The translations under genes and the position numbers were made by a program. A model generated the notes under the pieces. The model was given only the letters and a program-made list of their open reading frames with translations. It searched no databases and was not told the origin of the DNA. A stretch of DNA of 63,668 nucleotides, the filler included, from Octopus bimaculoides (Eukaryota), in assembly GCF_001194135.2 (NCBI RefSeq). It is 6 parts of 6 records of this genome, joined end to end, with 100 filler letters (N's around TTAATTAATTAA, not from the genome) between each part and the next. Parts side by side here need not be neighbours in the genome. Positions count along the whole stretch, not along the records: positions 26,611 to 32,693 come from NC_069003.1; 5 more parts are not named here. One strand, given 5' to 3'. This document shows positions 27,921 to 32,693 of this stretch, in pieces. The stretch's first letter is position 1. Each line of letters opens with the position of its first letter.

Positions 27921-27984
27921 ACTTTTTCACTTTCCCGAGCGTGAAACAAATATTCCTTCTTGTTGTTCATAAACCTGTCTATAC

Positions 27985-28017
<33 letters not shown>

Positions 28018-28606
28018 TGTATGTATGTGTAGGAGAATCTTTTCCTGCCGTTTTAATTGCTAGGTCCTGAAAGGTATAAGGCAGATATGAGTTGCAACCA
28101 TTAGCAATTTCTATTGAATTGCTAGATTAAAATAAACATCATTTTAATACGGAGCAGAGAGGACGTAACTACTCTGGAACATAAGAAAAGAATCTGGGCT
28201 CTAGGATATTTTATGGAGCACGAAATGACGAAAAAGCAGAGCTGGACTCCGCTGCATTTGAATTTAGAATGTTAAGAGCTGCGAGAATATAGTTAGAAAA
28301 TAAATAACAACCTACACCACTAAACACAGTTACTACTTCATGTCCCAAAAACTATGAAGTGAAAAATTGTCAGGAGAAAAAAATATCATAACCAACAACA
28401 GCAATAACTGCAGCAGCAGCTGCAGAAATAGAAGCAATAAGGAATCCAACTGCATCATTGCACCATCATGGAATCTAATAATCGCGTGTGTAAGTGTATA
28501 TGCGTACGCGCTCAAACACATACATATATACTCTTACACGCACACATCCATACACACACATGCACAAACATATGCGAACTCGTACACTGTCATACATACA
28601 TATACA

Positions 28607-28643
<37 letters not shown>

Positions 28644-28645
28644 AT

Positions 28646-28681
<36 letters not shown>

Positions 28682-28729
28682 GCTTGTGTAAGTGTGTATG
28701 TAAACGTACATCTCTTTCTCTCTCTCTAC

Positions 28730-28787
<58 letters not shown>

Positions 28788-29001
28788 NNNNNNNNNNNNN
28801 NNNNNNNNNNNNNNNNNNNNNNNNNNNNNNNNNNNNNNNNNNNNNNNNNNNNNNNNNNNNNNNNNNNNNNNNNNATATATATATATATATATATACATAT
28901 GTATGTATGTGTGTATTTGTTGGTAAGTACGCATAGATAGATAGATATACAGAAAAACAAACAGACAGACAGACAGACAGGCAGACAGGCAGACAGATAG
29001 A

Positions 29002-29007
29002 TTTATT
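29002..29007 (-). terminator. Candidate polyadenylation signal of the TRIM gene
   Basis: TTTATT on + (AATAAA on -), about 290 nt downstream of the stop codon. Confidence 0.4.
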
Positions 29008-29297
29008 TACAATACATATACGTGAGTATATATTTGTAAGTGCCGCTGAATGTGTTTTTGTGTGTGGCGCGCGCATTCGAGCAACAAATCAACCGTACTT
29101 ATTGTGGATGTCTGAAAGATTAAGCCTTGTCTCATCGTGTTTTGTTGGTTTATATTGCATTCTGTCAATCTCACAATGCTTCTCACTGATCTCTATCTCC
29201 TTGCGTTTCCAGATTTGCGTTAGTCTTTGTATCACTGCGTCATGAAAGCCACCACATCATCCAATACACATTGGCCTATCATAGCATTCACTGACAG

Positions 29298-32270
29298 TTA
29301 CGTTTCTACCGTTTCTTTCTTACGTAACACTTTCACGATTCCGGAATCAGATTCAGATAAATACAGCGTCATTCCGTCTGGAGATATGTCGAGACCACGT
29401 GGTAGCGTGAGGCCGTCGCTGGCGTCGTACATAACCTTATCAAACAAACCGTTTCCGTTAAGTCTGTAGATCTTGTTGGCTTCGCTGTCAGCAAGATAGA
29501 TAAAACCGTTGTCATCCACGCAAACTCCGCTCGGCTTCATTAGGGAGTGCTCCACACTGCCTGTGTACAAGAACTTTACATCTCCTTCTATATTACAACA
29601 GATTAAAGCTGAGCGTTTACAGTCGGATATCAAAAAATTGCCATCTACAGCGACCTTTGCTAAATAACGAGGCTCGATCAGTCGCCCGTATTCTTCTCTC
29701 AGAGTTGAAAGAGTCTGAAGAATTTCTCCATTTAAGCTCAGCAAATCAACAGCGTTGTCTCTCGAGCAGATGAGCCGTTTCGAATCCATCTTGGCCACGC
29801 CGATGTATTGGTTTTCTACGACAACTTTGGTGGAGATAGCTAAGAAATTGCTACGTGTGTCTCTCATAAGGAAACATATGCATTTCGACCAAGGCAGTAC
29901 GCAGACGACCATGTGTTCGGATATTGCGCAAATTCCAGTTGGAGATCCTTCCACGGAACAACACGCCAGAAGGTGTCCTTCCTTATTGAATTCTTTAATG
30001 TTCTTGTGGTGAAAATCCGAGACCACAATTCGATCGTCGTTTAGAAATAAAACGTCAAAGAGTAAAATCGGTTTGTTGACCTCTGACACTTCATTGACCG
30101 ACCCCAGAAAAGCATATGCCAGAGGACTTGAACCGGAAGGAAAAAGTCGTGATCCCACATTTGTCTTGTCTTTATCTGCTCGCGCTGGCACGAGAGCGTT
30201 GGAGTTATCTTTGTCCGCTTCTGACAGGCTTTTACTGTCATTATCAGTGGCTAAGGTTTCAGTTGATGTAGCAGGTTCCAAGGGAGAAGCGTCCCCTATC
30301 TCACCAATCAAAAGCCCATTAGTCGGCATCGTGTCATCAGGAAAGTTCTGAACGAGATCTGCATTGGGGAACTGTTTCAGCCTTTCAAAAAAGGCTGAAA
30401 TTTCATTGTTGTACCTCAGGAATATTCTGGTTACAACGTTACTACTCAGCGGCTCAGTCATTTCTTTAAACTGAAGCGTTTTATTGATATCGTGGAAGAT
30501 AGTTATCATCTGGTCATCGTGGGCCTCATCCAGAGCAACATCCATACATAGAAACGATTGATTCAATATCTCAATTTGCATCTCTGTTTGTTGGATTTCG
30601 CTTCGTAATTTTTCCTCCTCAACTGAAACCATCTGACCGACTTCCAAATGAAGTTTCACCAAAGCCTCGGTTTGTAGTTTCATTACAATGTCGTTAATAG
30701 TCGAATCAACATCACGAATTAGAGAAGATTTCTTTGATTTAAGACTGTTCAATCGCTTCTGTAGTTCCTGAATCACCGATAATTTGTTGTCTTTTCTCGA
30801 TGCAATCGTCCTTAGAATCCCCTCTCCTTCTCGCCGTTTCTCGTTTGCAATATCAGACAGTAACATTGGTTGCTGTCCATCGCTTGCGTGCTTCTCTCTG
30901 TAATGCTGGGAACTGCACTGCAGACACAACGGGATCCGACAACTGCTGCAGTAAACCGAAAAATAATCTAAATGCTTCTCACAGATAGATGATATACCCA
31001 GAAGTTTTTGATGCTTGTTTTTCGAAATATCGAATATATTGTGTGATCTAAACGGATCAAAACCTTTATGAAGGTCTGTACACATGTGACAGTATCCTTG
31101 CCCACATTGTATGCACCAGGTTATTGCAATCTTTATATTATTCCGTTTGAAGCAAGACGTACATTTCTGCTCTTCACGGCTTCGTCGGTCGGCTTTGAGT
31201 AGATACTCCACAAAATCGTTTATTGGGAATTTATTCATAATTATTTCTTTGATGGCACTGTTCTGAATAATTGGTTCCGTCACTGGAATTTCTACATTCA
31301 GTTTAATTTCTATTTTGCATTTTGGACACCAAATCCTAGTTGCCACACACAAAAGATCGTTGTCCGTATAATCGGGTTTCACAGCAAACGCCATAAAGTT
31401 TTCTCTGTCATACATCGAGAGAGCTAAACTGTCGTGTACACTTCCGCTATCACCGACAAGGGACTCGGCTTTACTAGTTGACCTCAGTGATCTTTCTGAC
31501 TTCATTGATCGCTCAGACTTCACTGACCTTTCTGATCTAACAGATCTTACTGATTCACGACGACTCTCACTTCTTGCTCCAGTGGGGGTCTTGGGGGTCT
31601 CCACGTCATTGGCTATATTCTCTTTGCTGGCTCCTTCTTCGGGTTTCTCTTTGTTTACTCCTTCTTCGTCACTATCTTCGAATGGGTTATAATTCTTATT
31701 CGCAGATTGCCCATCGTCTTCATTATTAACCACTTTCTCTTTGTTTTCTTCCTCATTCTTATTGTTTTCATTATTTTCTTTCTCATCATCTTTCTTTTTC
31801 TCTGCTTTCTTAGCGAGATTCTTCGCTGCCCTTCGACTTGAAAATAAAAATGCGAACCGGCTGCGCACTGGAGGTTTCTCCGGGGCCTCTTCTTTCTCAG
31901 ACGGTTTATCTGCATGAGGTATATCCGCAGCCGGTTCATCAGTCTCTACCGCTTCGTCTTCGGTGGTATTGACTCTACTCGCCGATGACTTCCTTGATAT
32001 TATCGCTGTTGAACAGGTACTGTCAATACTGCTTCGCTTGCTCAACGTTGCCGTTGATGCGACGCTCACTTTTTCCAGATCCATTTCTCTCCGCGCCAAC
32101 AAGGCATCTTTCTGTCGGACGATAGACTCGATAGCCCGCACCAAAATCCGATGAGTCAAACATCGTTCACAAAACGTATGCAAACACGGGAATCGCCGTG
32201 GCGGCGTGGTGAATCTATTTTCGCATAGATTGCAAGTTAATATGTTTTTGTAGGACATTTTGATCCTCAT
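29298..32270 (-). CDS. TRIM-NHL-type E3 ubiquitin ligase (split RING, B-box1, B-box2, coiled coil, NHL-like beta-propeller), 990 aa, single coding exon
   Basis: Uninterrupted 2973-nt ORF. RING ligands are C13,C16,C29,H31,C34,C37 and C315,C318. B-box1 spans aa 370-410 (CTSC..CIQC..CHMC..H..H) and B-box2 aa 430-461 (CEKH..CSSC..CLQC..H..H). A heptad-rich region covers ~aa 470-600. NHL-like repeats run from ~aa 734 (IVVSD; PSGVCVDDNGFIYLADSEANKI; PRGLDISPDG). Confidence 0.95.
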   Translation of the reverse strand: MRIKMSYKNILTCNLCENRFTTPPRRFPCLHTFCERCLTHRILVRAIESIVRQKDALLARREMDLEKVSVASTATLSKRSSIDSTCSTAIISRKSSASRVNTTEDEAVETDEPAADIPHADKPSEKEEAPEKPPVRSRFAFLFSSRRAAKNLAKKAEKKKDDEKENNENNKNEEENKEKVVNNEDDGQSANKNYNPFEDSDEEGVNKEKPEEGASKENIANDVETPKTPTGARSESRRESVRSVRSERSVKSERSMKSERSLRSTSKAESLVGDSGSVHDSLALSMYDRENFMAFAVKPDYTDNDLLCVATRIWCPKCKIEIKLNVEIPVTEPIIQNSAIKEIIMNKFPINDFVEYLLKADRRSREEQKCTSCFKRNNIKIAITWCIQCGQGYCHMCTDLHKGFDPFRSHNIFDISKNKHQKLLGISSICEKHLDYFSVYCSSCRIPLCLQCSSQHYREKHASDGQQPMLLSDIANEKRREGEGILRTIASRKDNKLSVIQELQKRLNSLKSKKSSLIRDVDSTINDIVMKLQTEALVKLHLEVGQMVSVEEEKLRSEIQQTEMQIEILNQSFLCMDVALDEAHDDQMITIFHDINKTLQFKEMTEPLSSNVVTRIFLRYNNEISAFFERLKQFPNADLVQNFPDDTMPTNGLLIGEIGDASPLEPATSTETLATDNDSKSLSEADKDNSNALVPARADKDKTNVGSRLFPSGSSPLAYAFLGSVNEVSEVNKPILLFDVLFLNDDRIVVSDFHHKNIKEFNKEGHLLACCSVEGSPTGICAISEHMVVCVLPWSKCICFLMRDTRSNFLAISTKVVVENQYIGVAKMDSKRLICSRDNAVDLLSLNGEILQTLSTLREEYGRLIEPRYLAKVAVDGNFLISDCKRSALICCNIEGDVKFLYTGSVEHSLMKPSGVCVDDNGFIYLADSEANKIYRLNGNGLFDKVMYDASDGLTLPRGLDISPDGMTLYLSESDSGIVKVLRKKETVET

Positions 32271-32493
32271 AGAAGTTTCAGAGATGGAATATTTCGAATA
32301 AATGTGAAATTATACACTTACATCTAGGCACAGATAGAATTAAGCAGACATAGTTATTTGTATAGAGAATGATCTCACTGAAAATTGTATGAAGATTATG
32401 TAGCCTAATCTGCATCAAGCAAATGAGTCAGGACCAAATGAGTCAGTTGTCACCGATATAAAGTCTTCCAGGGACCCACATCACGAATGTGAC

Positions 32494-32510
32494 CTGGAAA
32501 AGAAATATTA
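32494..32510 (-). promoter_or_regulatory. Candidate splice acceptor opening the TRIM coding exon (5' UTR intron)
   Basis: Minus strand TAATATTTCTTTTCCAG|GTCAC. The exon would begin at 32493, 223 nt before the ATG. Confidence 0.55.
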
Positions 32511-32693
32511 GAATATAAGTAGATAAACAAATAGATATACATATTTAGTTATACATGAAATATATATATACATTGTGGCAAGTACAAAACCAGCCTTGTG
32601 CAGGTAATTAGATATATACAAACATATATACATACATACAAATATACATACATACGTACATACAAATATACATACATATATATATGTATATAT

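What the first reader, a model, noticed from the sequence alone, without database searches (positions are those of the whole stretch)
31317..32234. RING finger split by 277 aa in a TRIM-NHL protein
Seen: C13-x2-C16-x12-C29-x-H31-x2-C34-x2-C37 is followed by 277 residues, mostly low-complexity and charge/Ser-rich, before C315-P-K-C318. That pair is followed by FPINDFVEYLL, the LPxNxxL-type motif that normally trails TRIM RINGs. Established: the C6-C7 spacer of C3HC4 RINGs is usually up to about 50 aa. Inference: the cross-brace RING folds around a very large disordered loop that acts as a regulatory or docking platform, or E3 activity is altered. The ORF is fully open, which suggests selection.
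Basis: partly seen in the sequence, partly recalled or inferred. Interest (0 to 1): 0.8.

Follow-up and report, generated by a model that had tools for sequence, protein, structure and literature searches.

The report
Octopus TRIM-NHL RING with giant loop
An expressed, conserved octopus ubiquitin-ligase gene has a 277-residue floppy segment between the sixth and seventh zinc-binding residues of its RING finger, about twice the length of the largest such loop in any human TRIM (TRIM52), so it is an extreme case of a known oddity rather than a new kind of domain.

Summary
ORF 29298-32270 (- strand, 990 aa) has C13, C16, C29, H31, C34 and C37, then 277 residues, then C315-P-K-C318 and FPINDFVEYLL.

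- **The loop is exonic.** Spliced mRNA contigs from six RNA runs cover it colinearly.
- **It is conserved.** Five octopod sequences keep a 273-285 aa loop. A more distant relative of unknown origin has 144 aa.
- **It is under purifying selection.** dN/dS is 0.37 in the loop core and 0.03-0.09 in the folded domains. Several motif islands are conserved.
- **The distal pair belongs to the RING.** Across 33 molluscan TRIM-NHL relatives with C6-C7 spacers of 12-285 aa, all eight zinc ligands are invariant. With the loop removed in silico, Pfam zf-C3HC4 matches end to end.
- **AlphaFold2 agrees as far as it goes.** Both RING halves score pLDDT of about 90 and the loop scores below 50. I could not read coordinates, so co-folding is inferred, not shown.

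This is the "loop 2" expansion already described for human TRIM52 and TRIM41. TRIM52's loop is 139 aa, acts as a degron, and leaves the RING active. The octopod case is independent, about twice as long, and mixed-charge rather than acidic. Its function as a regulatory, docking or turnover module is inferred only.

Verdict: real feature, new variant of a known kind, moderate interest.

The parts
29298..32270 (-). Complete coding sequence on one exon: 990 aa from M1, or 986 aa from the conserved start M5 at nt 32258. Domain order is RING, B-box1, B-box2, helical/coiled-coil region, NHL propeller.
   Evidence: ORF list and translation; Pfam; PDB matches to TRIM2/TRIM3/TRIM71 NHL and TRIM2/3 RING; orthologues.
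32493..32495 (-). 5' end of the coding exon. It follows a 5'UTR intron acceptor (ttcttttccag|gtcac; AG at 32495-32494, exon begins at 32493).
   Evidence: RNA contigs of X1-X6 follow the genome down to 32493/32495, then continue into unrelated upstream-exon sequence.
32160..32234 (-). RING N-terminal part: C13-x2-C16-x12-C29-x-H31-x2-C34-x2-C37 (zinc ligands 1-6).
   Evidence: Pfam RING models match aa 13-41 only. 55% identity and 1.1 A rmsd to the TRIM2 RING over 31 residues of the model. dN = 0 against the 86% orthologue.
31329..32159 (-). RING 'loop 2': the 277 residues (aa 38-314) between zinc ligands 6 and 7.
   Evidence: pLDDT is below 50 over most of it. dN/dS is 0.365 in its core.
32043..32168 (-). 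Long predicted helix continuing the RING central helix (ORF aa 35-76). Residues 38-55 are identical in four octopods except for one residue (Q53).
   Evidence: AF2 helix 31-72 in M5 numbering, pLDDT 81-91; conservation island; dN/dS 0.08.
31830..31865 (-). Conserved hydrophobic-basic island RSRFAFLFSSRR (aa 136-147), followed by a Lys-rich stretch.
   Evidence: Nearly invariant in five octopod sequences, including Argonauta.
31733..31797 (-). In-frame tandem repeat of 15 nt x 4.3 copies, encoding the N/E/K-rich stretch of the loop.
   Evidence: TRF.
31662..31688 (-). Conserved NPFEDSDEE motif (aa 195-203): NPF followed by acidic residues. Candidate EH-domain ligand.
   Evidence: N195, P196, F197, E198, S200, D201 and E203 are invariant across octopods although dS to Argonauta is saturated. 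The ligand assignment rests on general knowledge and was not tested.
31479..31558 (-). In-frame tandem repeat of 18 nt x 4.5 copies, encoding the hexapeptide repeats S-E-R-S-V/M-K (an RS-like, phosphorylatable block).
   Evidence: TRF; protein alignment.
31329..31436 (-). Strongly conserved lead-in to ligand 7 (aa 279-314, HDSLALSMYDRENFMAFAVKPDYTDNDLLCVATRIW). Its last residues form the first strand of a predicted hairpin.
   Evidence: Conservation island 280-307; dN/dS 0.054; AF2 strands 304-310 and 317-324 in M5 numbering.
31314..31328 (-). RING C-terminal part: C315-P-K-C318 (zinc ligands 7 and 8) plus K319, at the position of the TRIM2 linchpin R64.
   Evidence: C and C invariant, P nearly invariant in 33 sequences. 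phmmer aligns cpkcK with TRIM2 cpvcR once the loop is excised. pLDDT 93 for this block. Linchpin role from PMC9732051.
31197..31229 (-). FPINDFVEYLL (aa 348-358). It is the family-wide F-P/S/T-x-N-x-F/L motif and corresponds to helix alpha3, which forms the RING dimerisation four-helix bundle in TRIM2.
   Evidence: The motif lies 21-26 aa after C7 in most relatives that carry it, and 33 aa after C7 here and in P0004. AF2 helix 348-362 in M5 numbering. TRIM2 F81/F82/L86/V89. The correspondence itself is inferred.
31038..31163 (-). B-box 1 (aa 370-411).
   Evidence: Pfam ANCHR-like_BBOX and Trim66 B-box, both below cut-off. Cys/His pattern. Foldseek match to TRIM28 B-box1, TM 0.84 on the target.
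30888..30983 (-). B-box 2 (aa 430-461).
   Evidence: Pfam zf-B_box, 17.5 bits, below the 24.1 cut-off; Cys/His pattern.
29301..30113 (-). NHL beta-propeller (about aa 720-990).
   Evidence: Pfam NHL 33.9 bits against a cut-off of 20. TRIM2 NHL E = 3e-11, plus TRIM3, TRIM71 and Thin.

Best explanation
This is a real, transcribed TRIM-NHL ubiquitin-ligase gene specific to octopods. Its coding sequence lies on one exon, and it is probably Octopus bimaculoides LOC106870183. Its C3HC4 RING carries an extreme expansion of 'loop 2', the segment between zinc ligands 6 and 7.

**Proposed mechanism**
- C13/C16/C34/C37 form zinc site 1.
- C29/H31 form zinc site 2 together with the distal C315/C318. The cross-brace closes normally and the 277 residues are extruded as a mostly disordered, blocky mixed-charge tether.
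- The tether is anchored by an extended central helix (aa 35-76) and by a conserved lead-in to ligand 7 (aa 279-314).
- Part of the loop's length comes from in-frame tandem duplication of 15-nt and 18-nt units.
- The loop evolves several times faster than the folded domains but remains under purifying selection. It carries conserved short motifs: RSRFxFLFSSRR, NPF followed by acidic residues, and SERSxK repeats.
- Its most likely role is regulatory: control of turnover, phospho-dependent docking of partners, or modulation of RING self-association and E2 access. This is by analogy with TRIM52, whose loop 2 is a degron recognised by other E3 ligases while its RING stays active.

**Shown:** sequence anatomy, exonic status, conservation, selection, homology of C315/C318 to ligands 7 and 8.
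**Inferred:** co-folding of the two halves, retained E3 activity, loop function.

**Confidence by sub-claim:** about 0.95 that this is a real, expressed, conserved loop-2-expanded RING; about 0.75 that the two halves co-fold; about 0.4 that the loop has a regulatory, docking or turnover role. The overall figure of 0.6 blends these.
For: **Anatomy:**

**Transcription.** Contigs from six RNA runs cover 29100-32495 (X1, X2) or 31100-32495 (X3-X6) with no gaps or joints. They leave the genome exactly at a polypyrimidine-AG acceptor, so they are mature mRNA and not DNA.

**Conservation.**
- Octopus sinensis has a 285-aa spacer, an 86%-identical octopus 273, and Argonauta hians 275. All are colinear and open.
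- P0004 has a 144-aa acidic spacer and the same C7-to-FPxN distance of 33.

**Selection.** Against the 86% orthologue, dN/dS is 0.365 in the loop core, 0.05-0.08 at the loop flanks, and 0.03-0.09 in the folded domains. dS to Argonauta is saturated, yet motif islands persist.

**Ligand homology.** C9, C12, C25, H27, C30, C33, C311 and C314 (M5 numbering) are the invariant columns in 33 sequences whose spacers range from 12 to 285. After loop excision, Pfam zf-C3HC4 matches 1-40 of 40 at 27.9 bits, and the TRIM2 RING aligns through CPxC plus the linchpin position.

**Structure.** The AF2 run with 33 sequences gives pLDDT 79-95 for aa 1-40, 93 for the C7/C8 block, and below 50 for residues 79-296.

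**Growth mechanism:** TRF repeats.

**Precedent.** TRIM52 loop 2 is 139 aa, and TRIM41 is similar (PMC3845644). TRIM52's loop is a degron and its RING is active with UBCH5B/C (PMC12022042).
Against: - No coordinates were available, so the distances between C29/H31 and C315/C318 were never measured. Foldseek aligned only the N-terminal 31 residues to solved RINGs.
- The first AF2 run, with 3 sequences, was uninformative (pLDDT 33.7).
- Only 8 conserved residues precede C1, whereas TRIM2 needs helix alpha1 there for its dimerisation bundle. TRIM71, which also has a RING insertion, was inactive in discharge assays. E3 activity may therefore be weak or conditional.
- The residue after C8 is K here but Q in P0004, and it varies across the family.
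- Loop sequence is not conserved outside octopods, so any motif-based function is specific to that lineage.
- Contigs drop rare variants and raw-read depth was only about 1-5x, so a minor isoform spliced within the loop cannot be excluded.
Confidence: 0.6

Rival explanations
1. The RING is degenerate. The two halves no longer assemble into an active E3 module, and the protein works through its B-box, coiled-coil and NHL parts, like RING-less TRIM-NHL proteins such as Brat. The N-terminal half-RING and the CPKC knuckle are kept for some other reason, such as structural zinc binding or partner contact.
For: - The TRIM71 RING, which carries an insertion, and the TRIM3 RING lack discharge activity in vitro (PMC9732051).
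- Here the segment before C1 is only 8 conserved residues, so the canonical alpha1/alpha3 four-helix bundle is doubtful.
- The linchpin position is not conserved in P0004 or the wider family.
- No coordinate-level evidence of co-folding was obtained.
Against: - All eight ligands, the Pro of CPxC and the alpha3 motif are kept, with dN close to 0, although dS to Argonauta is saturated.
- AF2 is confident for both halves only when they are modelled together with a deep alignment.
- TRIM52, with a 139-aa loop, is catalytically active.
Confidence: 0.2
2. Most of the loop is an in-frame retained intron ('exitron'). It is removed in the functional isoform, which restores a near-canonical RING.
For: - Contigs do not report rare variants, and raw-read depth over the loop was only about 2x.
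- Low-complexity, repeat-containing coding sequence is typical of exitrons.
Against: - Six RNA runs give colinear contigs with no joint, one of them at word depth 213.
- No joints appear in the raw reads.
- NCBI isoforms in O. sinensis differ only at the C-terminus.
- The frame and conserved motifs are kept over saturated dS, which would not be expected for sequence that is routinely removed.
Confidence: 0.04
3. The split is an artefact: a misassembly, a gene fusion, or a chance CxxC downstream of a truncated half-RING.
For: The piece contains N gaps and microsatellites outside the gene.
Against: - The same architecture appears in independent assemblies of four species and in transcriptomes.
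- C7/C8 align with the invariant ligands of 32 relatives.
- There are no N runs inside the CDS.
Confidence: 0.01

Closest known systems
Human TRIM52 and TRIM41 'expanded RING' (loop 2 expansion)
   Same: - The insertion sits at the same place, between zinc ligands 6 and 7.
- It is low-complexity and predicted disordered.
- TRIM52's loop is 139 aa against a family mode of 13 and a usual range of 4-48 (PMC3845644).
- The RING is still active, and the loop acts as a regulatory element (a degron bound by HUWE1, BIRC6 and UBR4/KCMF1) (PMC12022042).
- P0004's 144-aa acidic loop resembles it closely in length and charge.
   Different: - The proteins belong to different TRIM classes: TRIM41 has a B30.2 domain and TRIM52 has neither coiled coil nor C-terminal domain, whereas this protein has NHL.
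- They come from different phyla, so the origin is almost certainly independent.
- The octopod loop is about twice as long (273-285 aa).
- It is a blocky polyampholyte (55 D+E, 49 K+R, 36 S) rather than strongly acidic.
- It is under purifying rather than positive selection.
- No functional data exist for it.
TRIM71/LIN-41 RING with a Ser/Gly-rich insertion
   Same: It is a TRIM-NHL (class VII) protein with two B-boxes whose RING carries a large low-complexity insertion. This shows that NHL-class TRIMs tolerate such insertions (PMC9732051).
   Different: - The TRIM71 insertion is much shorter (RING construct 2-128 against 2-95 for TRIM2) and has a different composition.
- TRIM71 has a filamin domain; none was detected here.
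- The TRIM71 RING was inactive in discharge assays; activity here is unknown.
- I did not verify the exact position of the TRIM71 insertion.
TRIM2/TRIM3 RING and NHL domains (closest solved structures)
   Same: - The motif PCLHTFCERCL is identical.
- The N-terminal part of the RING model is 55% identical, at 1.1 A rmsd.
- CPxC followed by a basic residue sits at the linchpin position.
- The NHL propeller matches with E = 3e-11.
   Different: - TRIM2/3 have a loop 2 of about 14 aa, one B-box, a filamin domain and a full alpha1 helix.
- The octopod protein is not their orthologue. It belongs to a mollusc-expanded TRIM-NHL group that NCBI labels variously as TRIM2-, 45-, 56-, 71- or 33-like.
Molluscan TRIM-NHL paralogues (scallop, Dreissena, Potamilus, oyster, cuttlefish)
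   Same: They share the domain order, the CPxC and the FPxNxF motif. Loop 2 varies in length across the family: mostly 12-21 aa, but 26, 31, 34-36 and 59 in some, and usually acidic when longer.
   Different: Their spacers stay within or just above the classical range, and Pfam sees the whole RING (P0015: positions 1-40 of 40). The octopod clade, together with P0004, is the extreme tail of this distribution.

Membership tests
C3HC4 RING finger (Pfam PF00097 zf-C3HC4) | Eight zinc ligands in the order C-C-C-H-C-C-C-C | tested here: met
   C13, C16, C29, H31, C34, C37, C315, C318. All eight columns are invariant in a 33-sequence alignment.
C3HC4 RING finger (Pfam PF00097 zf-C3HC4) | Consensus spacing, with 4-48 residues between ligands 6 and 7 | tested here: not met
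   The spacer is 277 residues. The consensus is quoted from PMC3845644. TRIM52 and TRIM41, which are accepted RINGs, also fail this criterion.
C3HC4 RING finger (Pfam PF00097 zf-C3HC4) | Profile match above the curated cut-off over the whole model | tested here: inconclusive
   The native protein scores 22.4 bits (cut-off 21) but matches only model positions 1-29 of 40. With the loop excised in silico it scores 27.9 bits over positions 1-40 of 40.
C3HC4 RING finger (Pfam PF00097 zf-C3HC4) | Cross-brace fold with two zinc sites: ligands 1, 2, 5, 6 and ligands 3, 4, 7, 8 | tested here: inconclusive
   AF2 gives pLDDT 79-95 for the N-terminal part and 93 for the C7/C8 block. No coordinates could be inspected, and Foldseek aligned only 31 residues.
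C3HC4 RING finger (Pfam PF00097 zf-C3HC4) | E2 binding and E3 ligase activity | not testable with these tools
   Only sequence hints are available: L15 after C13, P316 in CPxC, and K319 at the linchpin position.
TRIM / RBCC | RING followed by B-box(es) and a coiled coil, in that order | tested here: met
   - B-box profiles match aa 367-411 and 428-461, below the Pfam cut-offs.
- The TRIM28 RBCC aligns to aa 360-532 (M5 numbering) with E = 1e-3.
- Foldseek matches TRIM28 and PML B-box1.
- The coiled coil was inferred from the helical region and from relatives; it was not predicted separately.
TRIM-NHL (class VII) | C-terminal NHL-repeat beta-propeller | tested here: met
   Pfam NHL scores 33.9 bits against a cut-off of 20. 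TRIM2, TRIM3, TRIM71 and Thin NHL structures match with E from 3e-11 to 1e-7.
TRIM-NHL (class VII) | Filamin/Ig domain before the NHL (present in TRIM2, 3 and 71, absent in TRIM32) | tested here: not met
   No filamin hit appears in Pfam at E <= 1. The region between the helical part and the NHL is a poorly conserved linker.
TRIM52/TRIM41-type expanded RING loop 2 | Large low-complexity, disordered expansion between ligands 6 and 7 | tested here: met
   277 aa, with pLDDT below 50 over most of it. TRIM52 has 139 aa.
TRIM52/TRIM41-type expanded RING loop 2 | Common descent with the TRIM41/52 expansion | not tested
   No TRIM41/52 sequence was compared here. The different C-terminal domain and phylum make an independent origin the expectation. 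No known domain was found in the loop.
TRIM52/TRIM41-type expanded RING loop 2 | Strongly acidic composition that acts as a degron | tested here: not met
   The octopod loop has 55 D+E against 49 K+R. P0004 is acidic, with 42 against 12. Degron function cannot be tested here.

The most novel reading that the evidence does not exclude
The octopod loop is not just a tolerated spacer. It would be a lineage-specific signalling hub built into the catalytic domain. The conserved NPF-acidic motif would recruit EH-domain endocytic proteins, the SERSxK repeats would act as a phospho-switch, and the extended central helix together with the blocky charge pattern would replace the missing alpha1 helix in driving RING self-association or condensate formation. 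E3 activity of an RNA-binding TRIM-NHL protein would then be gated from inside its own RING. It would also be the longest loop 2 so far noted in a RING that is still functional.
Probability: 0.12. Interest if true: 0.6.

Novelty: new variant of a known kind. Interest (0 to 1): 0.4.

Why it matters
- **Plasticity of the RING fold.** If the two halves assemble, a RING cross-brace can close around a loop of nearly 300 residues. That is about twice the largest loop 2 among human TRIMs, and it arose independently of TRIM41/52.
- **A natural length series.** Within one protein family, loop 2 lengths of 12, 20, 34, 59, 144 and 285 aa are available. This series could be used to study how loop 2 length and charge affect E2 binding, dimerisation and turnover.
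- **Annotation.** Standard RING profiles and regular expressions see only half of this domain. The O. vulgaris gene model drops the N-terminal half entirely, and NCBI calls the gene 'uncharacterized'. Similar split RINGs are probably under-counted in invertebrate genomes.

Tried and rejected
- **Word-indexed protein searches (three).** I queried the full protein, a loop-deleted construct and P0004. They returned only the three close orthologues or the query itself. They therefore gave no named decapodiform or nautilus orthologue, and the organism behind P0004 (ENA ERZ21867824) stays unknown.
- **First AF2 run (3 sequences).** It gave pLDDT 33.7 and was discarded.
- **Foldseek on the better model.** It cannot bridge a 277-residue gap, so it reported only the N-terminal 31 residues against TRIM2 and other RINGs. 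This says nothing about co-folding either way.
- **Laying reads on the 3' flank (26611-29400).** An AATAAA lies near 29005.
- **Literature searches for 'split RING' and for mollusc TRIM-NHL insertions.** These found nothing relevant.
- **Alternative zinc ligands.** I considered whether H40, C86 or C308 could complete site 2 in place of C315/C318. C86 is not conserved: it is Ser in Argonauta. H40 and C308 have no counterpart in the canonical relatives. This alternative was rejected.
- **A known domain inside the loop.** None was found at E <= 1.


Full report
**1. What is in the sequence.**
The piece 26611-32693 holds one long ORF, 29298-32270 on the minus strand, of 990 aa. Its translation has C13, C16, C29, H31, C34 and C37. 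Then come 277 residues with no further CxxC, then C315-P-K-C318, and FPINDFVEYLL at 348-358. The finding's coordinates, 31317-32234, are exactly the codons from C318 to C13.

Pfam finds NHL repeats above cut-off, weak B-box matches at 367-411 and 428-461, and RING models that match only aa 13-41. That is positions 1-29 of the 40-position zf-C3HC4 model. Solved structures agree. The closest are the TRIM2, TRIM3 and TRIM71 NHL propellers. The TRIM2/TRIM3 RING aligns to residues 4-42 only.

The rest of the piece is microsatellites and N gaps.

**2. Is the frame real and expressed?**
By base composition, a 277-codon open frame has P of about 2e-8. None of 20,000 shuffles was open, and the other five frames have 4-31 stops.

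Contigs from six RNA runs cover the gene colinearly, with no gap, joint or mismatch in the loop. One run has word depth 213. The contigs leave the genome at 32493/32495, directly after ttcttttccag, and continue into a shared upstream-exon sequence. They therefore come from spliced mRNA. The whole CDS lies on one exon behind a 5'UTR intron.

Raw reads from two 2026 runs are sparse but show no joints. The NCBI isoforms in O. sinensis differ only at the NHL C-terminus. A rare isoform cannot be excluded.

**3. Conservation.**
Orthologues keep the split:

| Sequence | C6-C7 spacer (aa) |
|---|---|
| Window | 277 |
| O. sinensis | 285 |
| 86%-identical octopus | 273 |
| Argonauta hians | 275 |

The Argonauta protein is named after LOC106870183. 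I take that to be an O. bimaculoides gene ID, so the window is probably O. bimaculoides; this is inference.

Against the 86% orthologue, dN/dS varies by region:

| Region | dN/dS |
|---|---|
| Loop core | 0.365 |
| Post-C6 helix | 0.081 |
| Lead-in to C7 | 0.054 |
| RING N-terminal part | 0 |
| B-boxes, coiled coil, NHL | 0.07-0.09 |

dS to Argonauta is saturated, yet several islands persist:
- aa 38-55
- RSRFxFLFSSR
- NPFE(D/N)SD(E/D)E
- the SxRS/SERSxK block
- aa 280-307

Two in-frame tandem repeats, 15 nt x 4.3 and 18 nt x 4.5, show how part of the loop grew.

**4. Are C315/C318 the RING's ligands 7 and 8?**
An exhaustive profile search found one closer relative, P0004 (840 aa, from an ENA assembly of unknown organism, single exon). 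It has the same split, but its spacer is 144 aa, acidic and unalignable with the octopod loop. BLASTP aligns the two RING halves as separate segments, and the NHL domains are clearly the best-conserved part of the alignment.

The other hits are molluscan TRIM-NHL paralogues. In 33 aligned sequences the C6-C7 spacer is mostly 12-21 aa, with outliers of 26, 31, 34-36, 59, 144 and 273-285. The invariant columns are the initiator Met, one proline and exactly the eight zinc ligands, including C315/C318. The Pro of CPxC is nearly invariant.

The motif F-P/S/T-x-N-x-F/L follows C7 by 21-26 residues in most of the relatives that carry it, and by 33 in both the octopods and P0004.

With the loop excised in silico, zf-C3HC4 matches positions 1-40 of 40 at 27.9 bits. 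The TRIM2 RING then aligns through cpkcK/cpvcR, which places K319 at the position of the TRIM2 linchpin R64. The second refutation condition, that C315/C318 are not conserved, is not met.

In a cross-brace, ligands 7 and 8 pair with ligands 3 and 4 (C29/H31).

**5. Do the halves co-fold?**
AF2 on residues 1-466 with only three sequences was useless (pLDDT 33.7). With the 33-sequence alignment the result was:

| Region (M5 numbering) | pLDDT |
|---|---|
| aa 1-40 | 79-95 |
| Helix 31-72 | 81-91 |
| Most of residues 79-296 | below 50 |
| Block holding C311/C314 | 93 |

The C311/C314 block sits at the turn of a predicted hairpin. High confidence for a short knuckle suggests that it packs against the N-terminal part. 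I could not read coordinates, and Foldseek aligned only 31 N-terminal residues (1.1 A rmsd, 55% identity to the TRIM2 RING). Co-folding is therefore inferred, not shown.

**6. How it most likely works.**
- The RING closes normally and extrudes loop 2 as a disordered, blocky polyampholyte. Segments of net charge -7, +7, about -13 and +4 follow one another.
- The determinants that TRIM2 uses for E2~Ub activation are partly present: a hydrophobic residue after C1, CPxC, a basic residue at the linchpin position, and the alpha3 motif.
- Only 8 conserved residues precede C1. In TRIM2, helix alpha1 forms half of the dimerisation bundle there. RING self-association may therefore be non-canonical.
- By analogy with TRIM52, I expect the loop to control turnover or partner docking, or to tune RING self-association. 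TRIM52's loop 2 is a stand-alone degron bound by HUWE1, ubiquitinated by BIRC6 and extended by UBR4/KCMF1, and its RING remains active with UBCH5B/C (PMC12022042).
- NPF followed by acidic residues is the preferred ligand of EHD-type EH domains. This comes from my own knowledge and was not tested. The SERSxK repeats are obvious kinase targets. Both readings are hypotheses.

**7. Comparison with what is known.**
The segment between ligands 6 and 7 is the 'loop 2' of Malfavon-Borja et al. (PMC3845644). Human TRIMs have 4-48 residues there, with a mode of 13, except TRIM52 (139) and its parent TRIM41. The TRIM71 RING has a Ser/Gly-rich insertion and was inactive in discharge assays (PMC9732051).

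The octopod protein thus shows a known phenomenon, with these differences:
- It occurs in another TRIM class and another phylum.
- It is about twice as long.
- Its charge is mixed.
- It is under purifying selection.

It passes the tests for ligand order, profile match after excision, and RBCC and NHL membership. It fails the classical spacing rule, as TRIM52 also does, and it lacks a filamin domain.

**8. Verdict.**
The novelty is moderate: a new, extreme and independent variant of the expanded-loop-2 RING. The finding also has practical value for annotation, because the O. vulgaris model starts at M62 and loses the first half of the RING.

Noticed in passing
window 31037: T>C on the + strand, which is A>G in the mRNA, seen in 4 of 4 reads of RNA run X24. 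It changes codon 412 from ATT to GTT (I412V, just after B-box 1). It could be an A-to-I editing site or a SNP.
   Followed up: no
window 32087-32270 (aa 1-61): The Octopus vulgaris gene model CAI9739236.1 ('TRIM56-like', 934 aa) starts at the equivalent of M62, so it omits RING ligands 1-6. NCBI calls the O. sinensis and Argonauta genes 'uncharacterized'. The split RING is missed by annotation.
   Followed up: partly
window 32258-32270: The first ATG (MRIK-M) is in frame in Octopus species. In Argonauta hians the corresponding ATG is followed by a stop (ATGAGACTTAAATAA), so the conserved initiator is M5 at nt 32258.
   Followed up: yes
window 32493-32495: In run X6, two different upstream sequences are joined to the coding exon at 32493 and 32495. 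This suggests alternative first (5'UTR) exons.
   Followed up: no
window 29298-29600 (NHL C-terminus): O. sinensis isoform X2 (909 aa) replaces the last ~95 residues of the NHL propeller with a 6-residue tail. That would leave an incomplete propeller. It is a predicted isoform only.
   Followed up: no
window 29391: G>A on the + strand in RNA contigs of X1 and X2. It is the third position of codon L960 and is synonymous, so it is probably a polymorphism.
   Followed up: no
window 26611-29030: The flank downstream of the gene is almost entirely (TA)n, (CA)n, (GA)n and (CTGT)n microsatellites, with three runs of N (assembly gaps). An AATAAA lies near 29005, and the RNA contigs end between about 28880 and 29025.
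   Followed up: partly
L003 2001-4523 (P0004): This is the nearest relative outside octopods. It is a singleton from ENA assembly ERZ21867824, contig ctg118162l, organism not given. It also has a single-exon CDS, with a 144-aa acidic loop 2 and Q instead of K/R after C8.
   Followed up: partly
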